This document shows, piece after piece, positions 2,795 to 23,964 of a DNA stretch of 64,000 bases (positions are counted from its first letter, which is position 1; every line of letters begins with the position of its first letter). A program made the position numbers and the translations under genes. The stretch lies in the sequence record AP019418.1; one strand, given 5' to 3'. The notes below the pieces were generated by a model that saw only the letters and a program-made list of their open reading frames with translations, was not told the origin of the DNA and made no database searches.

Positions 2795-4438
2795 TTATTC
2801 TGCTTGGAATTTAGTGTTAATTACACTATTATAAAGTCCAGTTGCAGTATTTGCGTAACGCATTGCTTCACGAATAATGGAGTCATGTTTAGGTGCACTA
2901 TCTGTAATAATAGATGCTACCTTACGTGATACTTCTTCGATCTGTTCTTTAGAAACATCGTCGATTTTATCACTCTCTAGTTTCCGTGAAAGTTGATCAA
3001 CATCATCTTCAAGTTGCTTAATGGCTTTAACAATATTCCGACCGCCAGTGATAACATCAGCTGCATCATCAACCAGATTACGTAGAGCTACTGCTTCTTT
3101 CTTAGCTTGACTCTTATCAAAGTTCTTTAAAGTCACTTCAGTGCCAGGTTCTGCGGCTGTCTCATCATCCGTTAGATATACTTGAGTAGCAGTCGTAGTT
3201 ACAAGCTTATTACCCGGTAAAGTGTTAGATGTACTAGCGTAGTGTTTGAGAGGTCCATCTTGAAGTTTGTCCATCTTCTCAACTAGTTCACTAGCATCAT
3301 TACGCTCTGGATCCCAAGCTTTAAGCACAGTACCAATATTCGTTAGGTAGGTAGCATAGTCTTTTGCATATACAGATGCCATCCATTTAACGATAGGGCC
3401 ATATCCAACGTTAGCTGAAGGCTGAATGAATTTACCATTAGCAAATACGGGTCCACCATTTTTAACAGGAACCGTTAATTCACTGGGTATATTTTCAAAC
3501 TTAGCATTTTGGATAGCTAAAATGAGTTCATCAACTTTTACACTCACACGCGGTACACTATTCTTAAGACTATCCCATACGTGGCTAATAATTTCACGTA
3601 GTTTAGCAATAGCTTTCTTGATATAAGCAAGCGCCTTACGACCTAACTCTTTAATATCCTCAGTTGAAATCTTAACTGGATATAAATGACTTTTACCACC
3701 AGTCGTATAGTTTTCTAATGAGCTAGTTAAAGTATTATCACCAAGTACATGACGATGCGGTAAGAGTGCAGAATGAATAAATGCAGCTGTACTCTGACTG
3801 ATACCATTCATACCAGCTTGTCGAACAAGAGCTTTAATTGACTCTAGGGCATATGCGGTATTTAGACCTTGATTAATATCTTGCACTGCTGTAGTAACTA
3901 CTTGTGCATTACCAATGTCCATGAAATCAGTAGGTTTATCCATATCCACTGCAACAGCGATCTGTGGCACCACGCCATTATGTGCTAGTGGAATAGAACT
4001 ATCTTTAGCAGCCTGGTCAGCAATTTGCTGAGTTACTGTCTCACCACCTTGTGGATCCTCTCCTTCAGCACCTGCTGGAATAACTGTTTCAACAGCAACA
4101 TTAGGTTGTTCAGGAATAGGGGGTACTTCTGTTACTACATCTGTTTCAACTACAGCAACTGGCACAGCAGGTTGTTCGACTAGAGTAGCAGCTGGAGTCT
4201 CAACAATAACACCATTATTAGGAGTATTAACAATAGTGGTATCTGCTTCTACTGGTGCAGTTGGTGTAACACCAACATTATTGTCAGCTACATCTTGAAT
4301 AGTATTTTCAGGTACAGCGTCTTCAGAAGTGCAATCACCACTAGTCATGGCTGCTACTTTATCAACTGCTGTTTCAGGAATAGGTACCTCAGTATAGTCT
4401 TCTAGACTATCTAGATACTCATTGAGTTTAAATGTCAT
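2795..4438 (-). CDS. Inner-body protein, gp95-like (phiKZ internal head protein family)
   Basis: 547 aa; acidic N-terminal propeptide; GISQSTAAF...SLEN...ISTED block shared with neighbours. Confidence 0.85.
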   Translation of the reverse strand: MTFKLNEYLDSLEDYTEVPIPETAVDKVAAMTSGDCTSEDAVPENTIQDVADNNVGVTPTAPVEADTTIVNTPNNGVIVETPAATLVEQPAVPVAVVETDVVTEVPPIPEQPNVAVETVIPAGAEGEDPQGGETVTQQIADQAAKDSSIPLAHNGVVPQIAVAVDMDKPTDFMDIGNAQVVTTAVQDINQGLNTAYALESIKALVRQAGMNGISQSTAAFIHSALLPHRHVLGDNTLTSSLENYTTGGKSHLYPVKISTEDIKELGRKALAYIKKAIAKLREIISHVWDSLKNSVPRVSVKVDELILAIQNAKFENIPSELTVPVKNGGPVFANGKFIQPSANVGYGPIVKWMASVYAKDYATYLTNIGTVLKAWDPERNDASELVEKMDKLQDGPLKHYASTSNTLPGNKLVTTTATQVYLTDDETAAEPGTEVTLKNFDKSQAKKEAVALRNLVDDAADVITGGRNIVKAIKQLEDDVDQLSRKLESDKIDDVSKEQIEEVSRKVASIITDSAPKHDSIIREAMRYANTATGLYNSVINTKFQAE

Positions 4439-18538: not shown

Positions 18539-20053
18539 ATGTTTGAGTTATTGTTGTCTTCTGGACTAACAAATACGCCTATATATTCCGATCCTTATCC
18601 AGGTCCTAAAACACTGATAGCTGGGACAAGGGAATTAGGTTTGTATGGTGAAACAACATCTTCAGAATTATTTGGTTATGATGATGCAGCTAAATTAGTT
18701 AATATGACATTTGGAACAGTAATCAATGATGGACAACCATGGTTAAAGTTCTCTAATAAAAATGTTACTTGTTACATACCAAAGAAACCAGCTCGTAAAT
18801 CAATACAAAAATCACGGCTTAATAATGCCGGACTCCGTAATGGTGACTATGAAGTTAGATTTATGGGGAACATTTATAAATTTGGTTTATTAACAATGGC
18901 TGGTGCCACATCAGAATGGCAAAGGTTACTTTATAATGTTCACGTATCTAATTTAAATGGTGCTAACTGGCCTTATAAATTTACAGATAATGACTTAGGT
19001 ATTAACCAAGCGGTCGCTGGTGGTATTAGCACTGATGGTACTACTAACTGGGGAAGAGACCCAGGTAGTGATCCAGTTAATGACCAGCTCTATCGTGGCT
19101 ACTATGCGATTGATATAACTAGCTCGTCAAGTAGTGAAACGGGTGCTGCAACCCAAGGTTGGCGTCCAGTGGTTTATGCTAGTGGTACATATCCATTCGT
19201 TAAAGATAATGTTATTAAACTTACTGATTTTGAAACTGATAACGAAATGGCAGCAGGTGCCCAAATAGGTAACTTAGTCTATTATTACGGTGGTAAGAAT
19301 AATGCTAATACTGCTCTACGTACACTGAATTTAGTCACGGGTAAGTTAACAACATTACAACCAACTGGTACGCCTATAGCAGTTAAACAATGCTCGGCTG
19401 TTGCATTTAATGGTAAAGTATATTTCTATGGTGGTGAAAGTGCCACAGATGGTGTACTTACTAAAGATATGCAGTGTTATGATCCTGCAACTAATACATG
19501 GGAAATAAAATCACCAGGCACGATAGCTTGCCGGTATGCACGTGGAACTAGTCTTAATGGGTTAATCTACATATTAGGTGCAGCTGATACAACTGCGACA
19601 AATAATCGTGGATTTACATTAATGTACAATCCAACTACAGATACATATACCAGTGGTGCAGCATTTAATGATACTGGGGAATATACCCAAGATTATTCAG
19701 TGAGTATTTATAATAATAGCGTATGCGTTATTGGTGGTACGGTTGGTGCTGGTGTTAACACTGGAATCATATCGTACAATCAAACCAACAATAATTGGTC
19801 CAAACCAATAACTACAGGTATACCTCTTGGTGCAGCTATTAATATACGCCCATCTGGTGAACTTTATGTAATCGCTGGTGAAAATCAAAATAACGCACCA
19901 ATTAAGTATTATGAACCACGATTAGCACGATGGATAAATTTAGGTAATTTAGAAACTGGTTTAGTGGATGCAGGTTTTGCCAATACGTTTAATAATGACG
20001 GTAAGATTTATGTTCTAAACGGTAATCAGAATTTAAAATACCAAATTAGTTAA
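18539..20053 (+). CDS. Virion protein gp83-like: phiKZ gp83/gp131-family N-domain plus C-terminal Kelch beta-propeller
   Basis: ELGLYGETTSSELF...PWLKF N-domain; six spaced Kelch-like motifs (YYYGG, YFYGG, YILGA, CVIGG, YVIAG, YVLNG). Confidence 0.7.
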   Translation: MFELLLSSGLTNTPIYSDPYPGPKTLIAGTRELGLYGETTSSELFGYDDAAKLVNMTFGTVINDGQPWLKFSNKNVTCYIPKKPARKSIQKSRLNNAGLRNGDYEVRFMGNIYKFGLLTMAGATSEWQRLLYNVHVSNLNGANWPYKFTDNDLGINQAVAGGISTDGTTNWGRDPGSDPVNDQLYRGYYAIDITSSSSSETGAATQGWRPVVYASGTYPFVKDNVIKLTDFETDNEMAAGAQIGNLVYYYGGKNNANTALRTLNLVTGKLTTLQPTGTPIAVKQCSAVAFNGKVYFYGGESATDGVLTKDMQCYDPATNTWEIKSPGTIACRYARGTSLNGLIYILGAADTTATNNRGFTLMYNPTTDTYTSGAAFNDTGEYTQDYSVSIYNNSVCVIGGTVGAGVNTGIISYNQTNNNWSKPITTGIPLGAAINIRPSGELYVIAGENQNNAPIKYYEPRLARWINLGNLETGLVDAGFANTFNNDGKIYVLNGNQNLKYQIS

Positions 20054-20057
20054 CGAA

Positions 20058-20088
20058 ATAAACCCTCCCGTAATGGGAGGGTTTTATG
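20058..20088. terminator. Bidirectional terminator
   Basis: AAACCCTCCC-GTAAT-GGGAGGGTTT-TATG. Confidence 0.8.
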
Positions 20089-20156
20089 ATGTGTCGAAGT
20101 TTATGTTAGCAGTAATGATCAATTGATAATATTTAATTAGGAATACCTTCCATTTT

Positions 20157-20534
20157 TTAATATCCTTCATTAAGTAGTTCTGCTAGAGCACGTGCCTGTG
20201 AAATATCAGTAGAAGCAAAAACATCAGAAAGATAGTTATCATGTTCTTTTGCATTCTGACGCAATTCATCCATTAGATGTTTATTAGATACCGCCCATAC
20301 TTTCCACAGATTTTTATAATCATCATATTTGGGATTATACCCGTCTAGTGGTGGTTTTCCTTTACCAGCTTTCCAATGGTTGGAGTATATGCGATATCCT
20401 TTACAATCTAACTGCCAAGCTTCCTCAATTGTTCTGCCATCAGGAAGCCTTGCGTAAAGAGCCGAGAATCTTTTGTCACCAACAGATGAACATTCATATC
20501 CTCCTCGGCGCTTCCACTGATATATTACTTTGGG
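20157..20534 (-). CDS. Start-less 125-codon open frame (conserved phage hypothetical type GGYECSSVGDKRFSALYARLPDGRTIEE); candidate -1 frameshift extension of gp82
   Basis: Open from CCC 20534 to TAA 20157. No ATG/GTG/TTG for about 85 codons. Fills the gap up to the terminator. Missing from ORF track. Confidence 0.7.
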   Translation of the reverse strand, partial: PKVIYQWKRRGGYECSSVGDKRFSALYARLPDGRTIEEAWQLDCKGYRIYSNHWKAGKGKPPLDGYNPKYDDYKNLWKVWAVSNKHLMDELRQNAKEHDNYLSDVFASTDISQARALAELLNEGY

Positions 20535-22441
20535 TTCTTATAGGTATTAATAAACTTCTCTAGCAGGGTGTCCATTTTAGGAGCACCCATGATCTTCTGT
20601 GTGATTTCAATAGCATTAACCCTACCACCTGTTAAGTTTACGCCAACTTCACGGCGATGGTGTTCACTAATTCCTTCCATCATTGAGAATTCCATCACAC
20701 ATGTTTCACGTGCAATATTTAGAATCTGACTAACGTTAGGATATGTCGACACGATGTCAAGGTCGGCGATATGACAGAAGATTAAGGTTTTATAATTCGG
20801 TAAATCTTTAACACACTGCAATCCATTTGGACCTGCCATGTATGATGGTAGTGTAACAATCCAATCATTATGGCCAATAACATATTGATCAAGTTCATGC
20901 ACCATCTGATCTGAACTTGAACCAATGACACATGGCTCTGGTCTATTCAAATACCAGAAGTGCATATCGTCACATAGTCGTTTTGGGTTAGAACTAAAGT
21001 TCTTATAGTCAGATGCCTTAGAGAATAGACTTATAGAGCGACCAAGGTCATTTACTTGTTCATCAAGTTGTTCTAGTCGAATGGAGTCGATGATGTTATA
21101 AAGACCATATTTGATTTTATGCTTAGTCTGCATCTCACGGTGCCAATCGATACCACCAAGATGTGCAGTTTCTTTAAAGGTTAACTTACCAAATTCCATT
21201 ACATATCTAATAGAATCACCATAGGTAAAGTTATCATTTAATATAAAATCATCCACCGGTACCCATTCATTACTACCTACATTTTTAATATATTTAGTAA
21301 TAACGCCGCCTGGTCGGTCAACTAGTTGTTTATTAAAACCTTCAATAAAATCTTCTAAGTCCTTATCATTTTTAATGGTCGTGGATTTATCGATGTTTAG
21401 TTCTTTTCTAAGAATAGACTCTAACCGATAGTTAGGATCACGTCCTTTAGCTAATCGAGTTACTCGATAAGTTGACATAGAATCGATACATTGAAAACTA
21501 GAGGGTGCTGTAATCCAATGCCATTGATCCTCCGGTCCTTTAGATTTAGTGACCCCAGATGCAGTGGTGGTCATAGGTTCATCAATCTTAAAATGGAAAT
21601 ACCTATAATTCTTAGGTACCGATGGATCAGAAAAAACATCAGCTGGATTAACACCATAATGTTCTAATGTTTTTAAGATTCTACCAATGTCGAAGCTAAT
21701 ATTCCAGAATGCGAAGAAATCTGGTTTCCAGGTATGTAGTCGTTTAAAACATTCAATAATAATATCTACTGGTGTTTCAACAACCATTACTTCAATATCT
21801 AGACCACGTTCTTTAATTAGATGTGATAATACCTCTTCTTTTTGTGCTTGTTCTAATGTCTCTTTCACTGGATCTTCAATATCACTAACCCATCGTTTTA
21901 AATAGGCTAGGAAAGCTTTGTTCTTATGTGTAACTGACATACAGATAATCTGGCCATCGTTCTCAGCTTCATAAACGTTGGTTTCGATGTCACCGCCAGC
22001 AACAGTGTTTAGAGAGATTAGACCAGGATAACGTTCTTGATAATCATGCTTCAGATAACAGGTTGAACTAACATCACTGCCATATAGGTAAGGACTACGC
22101 GCTAGTTGACGAAGAGATCTAGCCGAATAGTCACCTAGGATTTTACTAATCTTACGTTTCATGTCAATTTGAGTTGACATGTATTTAACTAAGTTACGCT
22201 CATATTCGTAATCTTTCTTTTCTTTATGGTTACGCATTCCTTTTGCGGTAATCCAAAAAGGACGCTGGTAGTTTTCCCACATCCTTAAATTATTTGCAGT
22301 TGTACCATCTTCAAAATGAATTCGTTCTTTAACGAAATGCGCATCTGTAAACTTACCAAATTGATCAGTACAATAAGTAATATGTTTGGCTTCAATGCCC
22401 TTAATCTTTTTCTTATTTGTAACCTGTTGTTCATTAGACAT
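20525..22441 (-). CDS. Split family-B DNA polymerase, N-terminal part (3'-5' exonuclease + motif A), gp82-like
   Basis: ExoI GDIET, ExoII WNISFD, ExoIII YNIID, motif A DLDIVSTYP. Confidence 0.85.
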   Translation of the reverse strand: MSNEQQVTNKKKIKGIEAKHITYCTDQFGKFTDAHFVKERIHFEDGTTANNLRMWENYQRPFWITAKGMRNHKEKKDYEYERNLVKYMSTQIDMKRKISKILGDYSARSLRQLARSPYLYGSDVSSTCYLKHDYQERYPGLISLNTVAGGDIETNVYEAENDGQIICMSVTHKNKAFLAYLKRWVSDIEDPVKETLEQAQKEEVLSHLIKERGLDIEVMVVETPVDIIIECFKRLHTWKPDFFAFWNISFDIGRILKTLEHYGVNPADVFSDPSVPKNYRYFHFKIDEPMTTTASGVTKSKGPEDQWHWITAPSSFQCIDSMSTYRVTRLAKGRDPNYRLESILRKELNIDKSTTIKNDKDLEDFIEGFNKQLVDRPGGVITKYIKNVGSNEWVPVDDFILNDNFTYGDSIRYVMEFGKLTFKETAHLGGIDWHREMQTKHKIKYGLYNIIDSIRLEQLDEQVNDLGRSISLFSKASDYKNFSSNPKRLCDDMHFWYLNRPEPCVIGSSSDQMVHELDQYVIGHNDWIVTLPSYMAGPNGLQCVKDLPNYKTLIFCHIADLDIVSTYPNVSQILNIARETCVMEFSMMEGISEHHRREVGVNLTGGRVNAIEITQKIMGAPKMDTLLEKFINTYKNPK

Positions 22442-22511
22442 TGCTATAACCTCAGCACATATTGATATTTATCTACGTACTATATTAGTGCCTAGTAAAA
22501 GTAATAATCAG

Positions 22512-22541
22512 CATAAAGCCTCCCCTAGGGGAGGCAATATG
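22512..22541. terminator. Intrinsic terminator hairpin
   Basis: CATAAA-GCCTCCCC-TA-GGGGAGGC-AATATG. Confidence 0.75.
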
Positions 22542-22542
22542 T

Positions 22543-23964
22543 TTACATACCAGCTTTCTGCCGGAAGAAGTGTAGAACGAGTTGCCGCTTACCTTCAGGG
22601 ATGAAACGTGCAAGATAGTTAATATCTACCTGATAAAGCGCATCTGATACATCACTAGTAAATAGGCAGAATAGAGTAAGAAGATTAATGTGTGCTTCTT
22701 GACGGTTATTCTGAGTAGGTAGAGTAGCAACAAAGCGAAGTGCGTTAGATTCACTAAATAGAGTATTACGATTTTTCTTAACGAAATCAAAGATAATATC
22801 CATGCCTGATTTAAAGCCTTCAATATCTTCGATTGTCATTACGTAGTTGAATACATCATCTAGTTTCTTTTGTGCATCGCCACCACGTTCGATAGTGATA
22901 TAGTCACCAGGTTTAGCACCAGTGGCAAACTGCTCTAGACGAGATTCGATAAATACTTGGTTCATTTTGGTCATACCTTTACGAAGTACAGGTTCATTAG
23001 ATGTTGATTCACTATTCAAGATTTTAACTTCCCCGGTTGGTTTAATATCATCTTTACCAGAGAATACTTTCCATTGTTCAACAATAGTTTCAATATCTTG
23101 ACTAGTGGTAGGTAAGAATAAGCGATCGCGTAACTCAATAGCAATTTTAAAATCTTTTATCAGATTACTATTTTTAATAAGTCCTTCAGCCCAGTCTTCA
23201 AGCTCTGCTGTCGTCCAATCGGTAGGTGGAGCATTATCACGAATAACACTATTAACCCAACTACCACGTAGTGTTTTTGGTGGAGTAATACCTTGTTTAA
23301 CAAAATCAACCACTTCTTGGGTAGACCAATCTAGTGGAATATCACTAGTGTGAATACGCAGTTGCTTGACTAATTCTTCAAGCTTGATACTGTCTTCAGT
23401 ATTGCGAATATCTTGTTTCAGTGTATCTTCATTAACTACCGGTACAATTACTTCCTCAGTAGTCTCATTCTCTTTAGCCCTTTTAGTTAAAATATCATCA
23501 GCAATATCGGCAATATCATTAACTACACCAGTTAGACGATGGTTAGCAGCATCGATTAGTTCATCATCTGACCATTCATCATAAGGACGATATTTACGGG
23601 TTGGGTCAAATACAAAGCTACCGAGTTCAGTTTTACCTTTAGCAATGCCATCATTGGTAAACCATTCAATGACGTTTTCATCTGTCCATGTTTCAGGAAT
23701 ATCATGGTCAGTACGCAGTGCATTTACATTAACTTTAGCTAATTCTGAGGTATCGTTAACTGTATTAACTGAAGAATTAATATCATCTGCTGTAGCATAT
23801 ACTTCCTCAGGAGATACTAATTCAATATTTGTTAATCCTCGACCAATTTCAGAAGTTGGCTTATCTTCAGTTACTTCTGATAAAACTTCGTCTTTGACAA
23901 TAGGTTTTTCAGGTAAACGATTGAGTTGAGGAAACTTTCCAAATCGTTGATTCTTTTTAGACAT
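22543..23964 (-). CDS. Acidic hypothetical protein, gp81-like, with internal Trp repeats
   Basis: 473 aa; repeated DIPxxWT/S...W(T/S)xxEL units. Confidence 0.75.
   Translation of the reverse strand: MSKKNQRFGKFPQLNRLPEKPIVKDEVLSEVTEDKPTSEIGRGLTNIELVSPEEVYATADDINSSVNTVNDTSELAKVNVNALRTDHDIPETWTDENVIEWFTNDGIAKGKTELGSFVFDPTRKYRPYDEWSDDELIDAANHRLTGVVNDIADIADDILTKRAKENETTEEVIVPVVNEDTLKQDIRNTEDSIKLEELVKQLRIHTSDIPLDWSTQEVVDFVKQGITPPKTLRGSWVNSVIRDNAPPTDWTTAELEDWAEGLIKNSNLIKDFKIAIELRDRLFLPTTSQDIETIVEQWKVFSGKDDIKPTGEVKILNSESTSNEPVLRKGMTKMNQVFIESRLEQFATGAKPGDYITIERGGDAQKKLDDVFNYVMTIEDIEGFKSGMDIIFDFVKKNRNTLFSESNALRFVATLPTQNNRQEAHINLLTLFCLFTSDVSDALYQVDINYLARFIPEGKRQLVLHFFRQKAGM

What the first reader, a model, noticed from the sequence alone, without database searches (positions are those of the whole stretch)
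20157..20540. Candidate -1 frameshift extending the DNA polymerase exonuclease subunit by a 125-aa domain
gp82 ends AAC CCA AAG TAA. C_CCA_AAG (20534-20528) is a perfect X_XXY_YYZ slippery heptamer ending in the shift-prone A_AAG, directly before the stop. The -1 frame stays open for 125 codons (PKVIYQWKRRGGYECSSVGDKRFSALYARLPDGRTIEEAWQLDCKGY...) up to the terminator. It has no ATG/GTG/TTG or RBS before this protein-like portion. A fusion would give an unrecognised longer polymerase isoform. A weak downstream pairing (ATATC/GATAT) could assist.
Basis: partly seen in the sequence, partly recalled or inferred. Interest (0 to 1): 0.75.

Follow-up and report, generated by a model that had tools for sequence, protein, structure and literature searches.

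The report
Frameshift-extended phiKZ DNA polymerase subunit
The gene for the N-terminal half of the phiKZ-type phage DNA polymerase ends in a conserved slippery sequence that very probably lets a few ribosomes slip back one base and add a 123-residue extra domain, giving a longer form of the replication enzyme that nobody has annotated.

Summary
The window is a Phikzvirus genome. The gp82 (DNAP-N) ORF ends AAC CCA AAG TAA. The -1 frame opens one codon before C_CCA_AAG and runs 125 codons with no ATG/GTG/TTG before codon 88. That ORF is a strongly conserved domain (phrog_9995, E 1.8e-55; dN/dS about 0.03).

Comparison across about 27 distinct chimallivirus junctions supports recoding. All 20 junctions with the domain in the -1 frame carry C_CCA_AAG, G_GGA_AAG or A_AAA_AAG in the polymerase frame, inside the short overlap. 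These are the three most efficient -1 heptamers measured in E. coli. The heptamer shows no synonymous variation, while neighbouring conserved codons vary freely. The codon at the family's Met position is usually not a start (ATA, GTA, ACA, ACT, GTT, GAA). Other lineages place the domain in the +1 frame, or in frame behind one TAG. One distant chimallivirus fuses it in frame. Four polymerase genes without the domain have no heptamer.

No conserved stimulatory RNA structure was found, so the shift is probably infrequent. No product has been observed. The domain's function is unknown; a NADAR-like ADP-ribose-processing role is a weak lead only. No paper found in the searchable literature describes this isoform.

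The parts
20525..22441 (-). gp82-type ORF: the N-terminal subunit (DNAP-N) of the split family-B DNA polymerase. [quoted passage not shown] 638 codons plus TAA.
   Evidence: ORF list. phrog_3011 'DNA polymerase', E 1.1e-241. 100% nucleotide identity to Phikzvirus genomes annotated as DNA polymerase. PhiKZ gp82 is described as DNAP-N in bioRxiv 10.64898/2026.09.30.755723.
20528..20534 (-). Slippery heptamer C_CCA_AAG in the zero-frame register. It covers the last two sense codons of gp82 plus the last base of the preceding codon.
   Evidence: Sequence. The same heptamer in the same register is found in 13 of 14 distinct stop-adjacent junctions. The 14th has G_GGA_AAG. There is no synonymous variation. 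It is among the three most efficient E. coli heptamers (PMC4066793).
20525..20527 (-). Zero-frame stop TAA directly 3' of the heptamer.
   Evidence: The stop abuts the heptamer in 12 of 14 junction sequences (11 of 13 phages) of this type. Its identity varies (TAA, TAG or TGA) but its position is kept. In 201phi2-1 it lies one codon later.
20157..20534 (-). -1 frame ORF: 125 sense codons plus TAA. It encodes a phrog_9995 domain. If the shift occurs, 123 residues are added after K638, giving a 761-aa trans-frame product.
   Evidence: Translation. phrog_9995, E 1.8e-55, covering profile positions 2-123 of 124. AlphaFold2 model with mean pLDDT 96.4. dN/dS 0.03 against phiKZ and phiPA3.
20523..20525 (-). 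ATA codon at the position where free-standing family members, and phiPA3, have their initiator ATG.
   Evidence: Protein alignment A1 and junction alignments.
20157..20273 (-). The only piece of the -1 ORF that public records annotate: 38 codons from an internal ATG, the equivalent of PHIKZ082.1. This is probably an annotation artefact.
   Evidence: Annotated regions of phiKZ, KEN51 and PhiPizzaParty.
20060..20084 (-). Intrinsic terminator ending the gp82 / -1 ORF transcription unit.
   Evidence: Terminator scan: 10-bp stem with 6 GC pairs, followed by a T run.

Best explanation
Programmed -1 ribosomal frameshifting at C_CCA_AAG, the last two sense codons of gp82.

Most ribosomes terminate at TAA and make the 638-aa DNAP-N subunit. 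In a minority, the P-site tRNA-Pro slips from CCA to CCC and the A-site tRNA-Lys from AAG to AAA. These ribosomes then read GTA ATA TAT... and add the 123-residue phrog_9995 domain. The product is a 761-aa DNAP-N isoform (junction ...YKNPK-VIYQWK...) that carries an accessory domain on the replicative polymerase.

What is shown:
- the heptamer, its register and the open -1 frame;
- purifying selection on the -1 ORF;
- the lack of a start codon;
- nucleotide-level conservation of the heptamer and its replacement by other top heptamers;
- the domain's attachment to the polymerase gene in every frame relation, including a true in-frame fusion.

What is inferred:
- that slippage actually occurs;
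- that it is infrequent, perhaps from a few tenths of a percent to a few percent, because no conserved stimulatory RNA structure was found and only the adjacent stop could help;
- that lineages with ATG or GTG at the junction (phiPA3, 201phi2-1) may also make some free domain.

The domain's activity is not established. My best guess, at about 0.3, is a small NADAR-like enzyme or binder of ADP-ribose-type adducts acting on DNA at the replisome, possibly as counter-defence.
For: 1. Anatomy. The heptamer is in register and a stop follows directly. The -1 frame opens only one codon upstream, so the heptamer is the only possible shift site.

2. The -1 ORF is a real, selected protein. It matches phrog_9995 at E 1.8e-55. 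A search found 833 representative proteins. dN/dS is 0.03. The AlphaFold2 model has pLDDT 96.4.

3. There is no canonical start before codon 88. In 13 phages with a stop-adjacent heptamer, the codon at the family's Met position is ATA x2, ATG x2, GTG x3, GTA, ACA x2, ACT, GTT and GAA.

4. Heptamer conservation.
- Pro is CCA in 13 of 13 and Lys is AAG in 14 of 14, although gp82 itself prefers AAA (33 against 19).
- The preceding codon ends in C whichever of 7 amino acids it encodes.
- The single exception changes all three X bases together, to G_GGA_AAG.
- Invariant residues just downstream use 2 to 5 synonymous codons each.

5. Six further -1 lineages (Noxifer, L024, L026, L029, L049, L067) have A_AAA_AAG in the polymerase frame, 31 to 103 nt before the polymerase stop. 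The -1 frame is open from there, and no canonical start lies between the heptamer and the domain.

6. C_CCA_AAG, G_GGA_AAG and A_AAA_AAG are reported as the three most efficient -1 heptamers in E. coli (PMC4066793).

7. A distant chimallivirus encodes DNAP-N and the domain as one uninterrupted ORF (P0228 / L104). L081 and L083 have the domain in frame behind a single TAG.

8. Controls. Four chimallivirus DNAP-N genes without the domain (DT01, RP12, EL, Phobos) have no X_XXY_YYZ in their last 40 codons.

9. The gp82 ORF and the -1 ORF share one transcription unit that ends at a terminator.
Against: - No trans-frame protein, ribosome-profiling data or reporter data are available. The recent structural study of PhiKZ DNAP expressed gp82 as the 638-aa protein and does not mention a longer form.
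- No conserved downstream hairpin or pseudoknot and no upstream SD-like element was found. With the bare heptamer, E. coli values are only about 0.3%, up to about 3.7% with a favourable 3' context.
- Some relatives have a usable ATG or GTG exactly at the domain start. The family is mostly free-standing in other phages, so a separate protein is a workable form.
- The D6/Psa21 clade has the domain in the +1 frame without a classical heptamer, and about half of its members have GTG or TTG at the start position.
- The tRNA-Lys repertoire of Pseudomonas, which affects slippage on A_AAG, was not examined.
Confidence: 0.8

Rival explanations
1. The domain is made as a separate 122-aa protein. Ribosomes terminate at the gp82 stop and reinitiate (translational coupling) at the overlapping codon, which is ATA in this genome and ATG or GTG in some relatives. 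There is no frameshift.
For: The stop and the start position overlap in the classic TAATG arrangement in phiPA3 and L016. 201phi2-1, Viktualia and L096 have GTG there. Free-standing homologues begin exactly at this residue.
Against: ATA, GTA, ACA, ACT, GTT and GAA occupy that position in most lineages, and no SD sequence precedes it. This model does not explain the fixed third base of the preceding codon, the fixed CCA and AAG codons, or the coordinated switch to G_GGA_AAG. It also does not explain the A_AAA_AAG lineages, where the domain frame overlaps the polymerase gene by 31 to 103 nt without a start, or the in-frame fusion in L104.
Confidence: 0.1
2. The shift is made at the RNA level: RNA polymerase slips and produces a minority of mRNAs with one base more or less. 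It is not made by the ribosome.
For: The A_AAA_AAG lineages contain a run of six A. The phage uses its own unusual RNA polymerases (established knowledge).
Against: CCCAAAG and GGGAAAG contain no run longer than three. Transcriptional slippage as generally described needs long homopolymer runs (my own knowledge). What is conserved is the X_XXY_YYZ register relative to the reading frame, which matters for tRNA re-pairing and not for RNA polymerase.
Confidence: 0.03
3. The -1 ORF is a dead remnant in the phiKZ lineage, a gene that lost its ATG by an ATG-to-ATA mutation, or the junction is a sequencing error.
For: A single G-to-A difference separates ATA from the ATG of phiPA3.
Against: 47 independent phage records have at least 98% amino-acid identity over all 125 codons. 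Between the window and phiKZ there are 10 nucleotide differences but only 1 amino-acid change, giving dN/dS 0.03. Several genera also lack a start.
Confidence: 0.02

Closest known systems
Bacterial and IS-element -1 programmed frameshift sites of the V_VVA_AAG type (IS3/IS911 OrfAB; E. coli dnaX tau/gamma at A_AAA_AAG)
   Same: Same class of heptamer, read by tRNA-Lys on AAG. Two products come from one mRNA at a set ratio. dnaX is also a replicase gene. These heptamers are the most efficient in E. coli (PMC4066793). The dnaX and IS details are from my own knowledge.
   Different: dnaX frameshifting truncates the protein and uses an upstream SD-like element plus a downstream hairpin. IS3 uses a pseudoknot. 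Here the shift extends the protein. No conserved structure or SD was found. The zero-frame stop abuts the heptamer.
Tail assembly chaperone frameshift of tailed phages (lambda G/GT at G_GGA_AAG)
   Same: A phage gene whose last codons hold a slippery heptamer, producing a low-abundance C-terminally extended isoform. The extension ORF has no start of its own and is often mis-annotated. Across phages the frame relation varies (-1 in most, +1/-2 in some). This is from my own knowledge of Xu, Hendrix and Duda 2004. G_GGA_AAG is the heptamer found in L018.
   Different: A different gene and function: a replication enzyme rather than a morphogenetic chaperone. In this family, in-frame fusion and in-frame-stop versions also exist.
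PhiKZ split DNA polymerase DNAP-N (gp82) + DNAP-C (gp50) + Rhc (gp155), bioRxiv 10.64898/2026.09.30.755723
   Same: The upstream ORF is this DNAP-N subunit. Residues 589-638 belong to the 'palm insertion' domain shared with DNAP-C.
   Different: That work describes a 638-residue subunit only and mentions no longer isoform or frameshift. The extension would start directly after K638.
NADAR domain (Pfam PF08719; E. coli YbiA, PDB 2b3w; Phytophthora NADAR with ADP-ribose, PDB 8bau)
   Same: These are the best, and recurrent, remote structural matches of the domain model: YbiA with TMq 0.52, plus many viral NADAR proteins. The domain is found fused to DUF4326 and YAcAr/SLOG domains. These are the partners reported for viral NADAR domains (PMC9503650).
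   Different: There is no Pfam NADAR hit in any of 47 members. Profile-profile comparison with a YbiA-family alignment is negative, probability 0.07%. Foldseek E-values are 0.3 to 8. The domain is about 40 residues shorter than NADAR. The relationship is a lead, not a demonstrated membership.

Membership tests
-1 programmed ribosomal frameshift site (bacterial X_XXY_YYZ type) | Slippery heptamer in the zero-frame register that allows both tRNAs to re-pair in the -1 frame | tested here: met
   C_CCA_AAG at 20534..20528, in register with the gp82 ORF.
-1 programmed ribosomal frameshift site (bacterial X_XXY_YYZ type) | A -1 ORF that is open from the heptamer, lacks its own initiation signal and encodes a protein under selection | tested here: met
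   125 codons. The first ATG/GTG/TTG is at codon 88. phrog_9995, E 1.8e-55. dN/dS 0.03.
-1 programmed ribosomal frameshift site (bacterial X_XXY_YYZ type) | Heptamer conserved at the nucleotide level across relatives beyond what the encoded amino acids require | tested here: met
   No synonymous variation in 14 junction sequences. The preceding codon always ends in C across 7 different amino acids. There is a coordinated change to G_GGA_AAG in L018, and A_AAA_AAG in six other lineages. It is absent from four polymerase genes without the domain.
-1 programmed ribosomal frameshift site (bacterial X_XXY_YYZ type) | Stimulatory element: a downstream hairpin or pseudoknot, or an upstream SD-like sequence | tested here: not met
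   The consensus fold of 9 relatives is -6.0 kcal/mol with a covariation term of -0.08. The window fold has z = -1.94. No SD-like sequence is visible upstream. Only the adjacent stop codon is conserved in position. This feature is common but not obligatory for the family.
-1 programmed ribosomal frameshift site (bacterial X_XXY_YYZ type) | A trans-frame protein product is observed | not testable with these tools
   No proteomic or ribosome-profiling data could be queried. No paper mentioning it was found.
Chimallivirus family-B DNA polymerase N-terminal subunit (gp82 / DNAP-N) | Sequence membership plus the exonuclease and motif A regions | tested here: met
   phrog_3011, E 1.1e-241, covering profile positions 2-570 of 576. 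97-100% identity to phiKZ gp82. Motif A with D562 is described.
phrog_9995 domain family (unnamed, function unknown) | Full-length profile match | tested here: met
   E 1.8e-55; residues 5-125 match profile positions 2-123. 29 invariant columns in a 47-sequence alignment.
NADAR (PF08719) | Match to the family profile | tested here: not met
   No Pfam hit at E up to 0.1 in any of 47 members. hhalign against a YbiA-family alignment gives probability 0.07%.
NADAR (PF08719) | Same fold as solved NADAR structures | tested here: inconclusive
   The top PDB hit is YbiA 2b3w (TMq 0.52, E 2.4, probability 0.15). 8bau gives TMq 0.42. Hits to viral NADAR proteins recur at E 0.3 to 8.
NADAR (PF08719) | Hydrolysis of an ADP-ribose N-glycosidic linkage | not testable with these tools
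   Needs a biochemical assay.

The most novel reading that the evidence does not exclude
Nucleus-forming Pseudomonas phages make a sub-stoichiometric form of their replicative polymerase that carries a small NADAR-like enzyme. It is delivered by recoding so that only some replisomes have it. It removes ADP-ribose-type adducts from template DNA, for example those laid down by DarT-like defence toxins, at the fork. The same attachment has been re-engineered during evolution as a -1 shift, a +1/-2 shift, stop-codon readthrough and a plain fusion.
Probability: 0.25. Interest if true: 0.85.

Novelty: new member of a known kind. Interest (0 to 1): 0.72.

Why it matters
PhiKZ is the model nucleus-forming jumbo phage and a phage-therapy chassis. 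Its DNA polymerase has only just been reconstituted, as a gp82-gp50-Rhc machine. If a second, longer gp82 isoform exists, the composition of the replisome is incomplete as described.

About 125 codons in roughly 50 sequenced Phikzvirus genomes, and in several related genera, are mis-annotated as fragments or as non-coding. The case would also be a clear example of frameshifting in a phage replication gene. It is unusual because the same domain junction exists in -1, +1, in-frame-stop and fused versions, which offers a natural series for studying how recoding sites evolve.

The domain is widespread: 833 representative proteins, many of them inside giant injected virion proteins, and none characterised. 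A link to the polymerase gives a concrete starting point for finding its function.

Tried and rejected
- Known families for the -1 ORF. Pfam, NCBIfam and PDB sequence searches gave only chance-level hits (GAUT_1 E 0.024; ribosomal protein uL3 E 0.005).
- gp82 against PDB sequences: no hit.
- Rfam over 19800..22700: only sub-threshold matches around the terminator.
- A conserved stimulatory RNA structure downstream of the heptamer: rejected. A 7-bp GGAGGA/TCCTCC pairing seen by eye in phiPA3-like sequences lies about 22 nt from the heptamer, follows the Gly-Gly / Ser-Ser codons, and is degraded in the window.
- General TAG recoding in L081/L083: no support.
- NADAR homology by profile-profile comparison: negative.
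- Co-occurrence of the extension with the gp82 'little finger' insertion. It is present in most domain-bearing loci and absent in four controls, but L018 and L029 have the extension without a detectable insertion. It is only a loose correlation.
- Literature searches for a frameshift in this gene, or for PHIKZ082.1: nothing found. Searching for CCCAAAG as text returned only primer lists.
- The fused protein was not folded. Read-through sequences are not accepted by reference, and the natural fusion P0228 would have had too shallow an alignment.
Full report
**What the window is.**
The region is 100% identical to several Phikzvirus genomes (PA02, KTN4, PA7 and others) and 97% identical to phiKZ itself. 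The minus-strand ORF 22441..20525 (638 codons) is the phiKZ gp82 homologue. It matches phrog_3011 'DNA polymerase' at E 1.1e-241. A 2026 preprint shows that PhiKZ gp82 is DNAP-N, the N-terminal subunit of a split family-B polymerase. [quoted passage not shown] It forms a 1:1 complex with gp50 (DNAP-C) and binds Rhc/gp155. Residues 589-638 belong to a 'palm insertion' domain. The paper describes only the 638-residue protein and mentions no frameshift.

**Check of the observation.**
- The gene ends AAC CCA AAG TAA, and C_CCA_AAG lies at 20534..20528 in the X_XXY_YYZ register.
- The -1 frame has a TAA one codon upstream of the heptamer and is then open for 125 codons to 20157. The heptamer is therefore the only place where a -1 shift could join the two frames.
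- No ATG, GTG or TTG occurs in that frame before codon 88.
- A strong intrinsic terminator follows at 20084..20060, so both ORFs sit on one transcript.
- The heptamer alone is not remarkable: it occurs 3 times in 64 kb against 5 expected.
The window fold has z = -1.94, and the consensus fold of nine relatives is -6 kcal/mol without covariation.

**The -1 ORF encodes a real protein domain.**
- It matches phrog_9995 over the whole 124-position profile at E 1.8e-55.
- A search of 5.8 billion proteins found 184 relatives, mostly 120-135 aa and free-standing. A profile search of 1.84 billion representatives found 833.
- A 47-sequence alignment has 29 invariant columns.
- The AlphaFold2 model is very confident, with mean pLDDT 96.4.
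- Between the window and phiKZ the ORF differs at 10 nucleotides but only 1 amino acid, giving dN/dS 0.03. Against phiPA3 dN/dS is also 0.03.
- 47 phage records have at least 98% amino-acid identity over all 125 codons.
- A pseudogene or a sequencing error is therefore excluded.
- Public records annotate only fragments of it: PHIKZ082.1 is the last 38 codons, and other records add small ORFs in other frames.

**Comparative test of the junction.**
I collected the junction between the gp82-type gene and the domain from GenBank phages, IMG/VR contigs and assemblies. This gave about 27 distinct junction sequences.

(a) Stop-adjacent heptamer, 14 junction sequences from 13 phages: the window and phiKZ, phiPA3, 201phi2-1, PS119XW, Phabio, Viktualia, L014, L016, L017, L018, L019, L096 and L100.
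- The domain is in the -1 frame and the polymerase gene ends xxC CCA AAG stop. In 201phi2-1 one extra codon precedes the stop.
- The residue before Pro is N, P, S, A, L, V or T, yet its codon always ends in C.
- Pro is always CCA and Lys is always AAG, although gp82 itself uses AAA more often (33 against 19).
- The stop is TAA, TAG or TGA.
- The only exception, L018, reads CTG GGA AAG TAG, which is G_GGA_AAG. All three X positions changed together.
- In the same sequences, invariant residues just downstream (E, C, S, S, G, D, R, S) use 2 to 5 different codons each.

(b) Upstream A_AAA_AAG, six further lineages: Noxifer, L024, L026, L029, L049 and L067.
- The domain is again in the -1 frame, but the overlap is longer.
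- A_AAA_AAG sits in the polymerase register 31 to 103 nt before the polymerase stop.
- The -1 frame is open from there, with no canonical start between the heptamer and the domain.

(c) The start codon is not conserved. At the position where free-standing homologues have Met, the 13 stop-adjacent phages have ATA x2, ATG x2, GTG x3, GTA, ACA x2, ACT, GTT and GAA.

(d) Controls. Four chimallivirus DNAP-N genes not followed by the domain (pPa_SNUABM_DT01, RP12, EL, Phobos) have no X_XXY_YYZ heptamer in their last 40 codons.

(e) Known efficiency. Sharma et al. 2014 report that C_CCA_AAG, G_GGA_AAG and A_AAA_AAG are the most efficient -1 heptamers in E. coli (PMC4066793). These are exactly the three found here.

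A given 7-mer has a chance of about 6e-5 per codon position, and the overlaps are 3 to 60 codons long. Finding one of these three motifs in register in all 20 of the -1 junctions cannot be chance, even if the 20 collapse to four to seven independent lineages.

**The polymerase-domain link exists in other coding arrangements.**
- A distant chimallivirus contig (L104, next to a PhiKZ-type major capsid gene) encodes one uninterrupted 698-aa protein. DNAP-N (phrog_3011, E 1.5e-96, 30% identity to gp82) is followed by the domain (phrog_9995, E 3.7e-43).
- L081 and L083 have the domain in frame 0 behind a single TAG, with no start nearby and no sign of general TAG recoding.
- The D6/Psa21 clade (eight contigs) has the domain in the +1 frame. 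It keeps an invariant GAA AAG AAG between variable codons. In L030 a stop in the domain frame lies only three codons upstream.
- In that clade the codon at the Met position is GTG x3, TTG, CTG x2, ACG and CGG.
- I cannot decide between a -2 slip of tRNA-Lys (AAG to AAA), a +1 slip, and GTG/TTG initiation for this clade.

Together these arrangements indicate that the selected product is the polymerase carrying the domain, reached by different decoding routes.

**Mechanism proposed, and what is inferred.**
The anatomy and the comparative signature above are shown. It is inferred that, in a fraction of ribosomes, tRNA-Pro and tRNA-Lys re-pair from CCA AAG to CCC AAA. Translation then continues GTA ATA TAT..., giving gp82(1-638) plus 123 residues, or 761 aa.

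No conserved RNA structure or SD-like element was found. The adjacent stop is the only conserved context feature. Bare V_VVA_AAG heptamers give about 0.3% in E. coli, and up to about 3.7% with a good 3' context. I therefore expect a minor isoform. In phiPA3, L016, 201phi2-1, Viktualia and L096 the ATG or GTG at the junction may add some free domain. Confidence in frameshifting in this genome is 0.8.

**Rival explanations.**
- Coupled reinitiation at ATA. It explains the TAATG geometry of phiPA3. It does not explain the non-start codons, the synonymous-site conservation of the heptamer, the A_AAA_AAG lineages or the in-frame fusion. Confidence 0.1.
- Transcriptional slippage. It is unlikely because CCCAAAG and GGGAAAG have no homopolymer run, and what is conserved is the codon register. 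Confidence 0.03.
- Pseudogene or sequencing error. Excluded. Confidence 0.02.

**What the domain might do.**
No Pfam, NCBIfam or PDB sequence match exists.

Elsewhere the domain occurs in these settings:
- free-standing, for example near the left end of N4-like Achromobacter phages;
- fused to DUF4326 and to YAcAr/SLOG domains (L047, L033, P0125, P0128);
- fused to a 5'-3' exonuclease (L045);
- fused to a DprA-like domain (P0153);
- embedded in giant virion proteins of 2000-6000 aa.

Foldseek finds no significant match outside the family. The best PDB hit is the NADAR protein YbiA (TMq 0.52). NADAR with ADP-ribose (8bau) and many viral NADAR or 'DUF4326' proteins recur in the lists. [quoted passage not shown]

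By eye, the motif FSAL..(7)..DGRTIEEAWQ..K resembles the NADAR FSNF..(8)..DG..(5)..SEHYFQ..K, but this is only my reading. A profile-profile comparison with a shallow YbiA-family alignment is negative.

I therefore treat 'small NADAR-like ADP-ribose-processing module tethered to the replisome, possibly counter-defence' as a hypothesis at about 0.3, not a finding.

**Novelty.**
Programmed -1 frameshifting on such heptamers is well known (IS3 family, dnaX, phage tail chaperones). This is a new member of that kind in a new gene: a phage replicative polymerase. No paper in the searchable library mentions it, the 2026 structural study does not, and database records mis-annotate the ORF. It is of clear interest to those working on chimallivirus replication, and it can be tested directly with existing proteomic data.

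Noticed in passing
L004 (phiPA3, HQ630627.1) 1920-2225: The phiPA3 DNAP-N gene is interrupted by a group I intron (Rfam RF00028, 71.7 bits). It sits directly after the codon aligned to the catalytic motif A Asp562 of gp82. GenBank annotates only exon 1 (gp085) and leaves exon 2 unannotated. L081 and L083 show a gap of about 370 nt at the same position.
   Followed up: partly
L008, L009, L025, L027, L030, L036, L037, L039 (D6/Psa21 clade), about 10 codons before the polymerase stop: The domain lies in the +1 (= -2) frame. An invariant GAA AAG AAG sits between variable codons, and the codon at the Met position is GTG, TTG, CTG, ACG or CGG. This may be a -2 or +1 recoding site, or GTG/TTG initiation. 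It is unresolved.
   Followed up: partly
L081 and L083 (IMG/VR contigs), junction at about 2995-3005: The polymerase and the domain are in the same frame, separated by a single TAG (..VMED*LTFQWERFGG..). No start codon is nearby, which suggests readthrough or suppression. There is no evidence that the contig recodes TAG in general.
   Followed up: partly
L104 3001-5097 (Logan SRR25242035 contig; protein P0228): [quoted passage not shown]
   Followed up: yes
window 20157-20273 (-) and the equivalent features in phiKZ, KEN51 and PhiPizzaParty: Public records annotate only the last 38 codons of the -1 ORF (PHIKZ082.1), plus a 29-codon ORF in another frame. Phabio, PS119XW, D6, Psa21 and Noxifer annotate N-terminally truncated versions that start at internal ATGs.
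   Followed up: yes
gp82 residues about 350-415 (window about 21197-21394, -): The 'little finger' insertion, described as restricted to Pseudomonas chimalliviruses, is present in most loci that carry the extension domain and absent from four that lack it. L018 and L029 have the domain without a detectable insertion. It may be a docking partner, but the correlation is loose.
   Followed up: partly
L053, L044, L048, L060, L061, L069, L075, L080 and proteins P0134-P0266: The same 120-aa domain is embedded in giant (2000-6000 aa) phage virion proteins (phrog_16227, and virion RNA polymerase-like phrog_2206). It is also fused to DUF4326, YAcAr/SLOG, DprA-like and 5'-3' exonuclease domains. It is a widespread, uncharacterised mobile module.
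   Followed up: partly
window 22518-22535: A perfect 7-bp GC-rich hairpin with T runs on both strands lies between the gp81-type and gp82-type genes. It may be a terminator separating the two same-strand genes.
   Followed up: no
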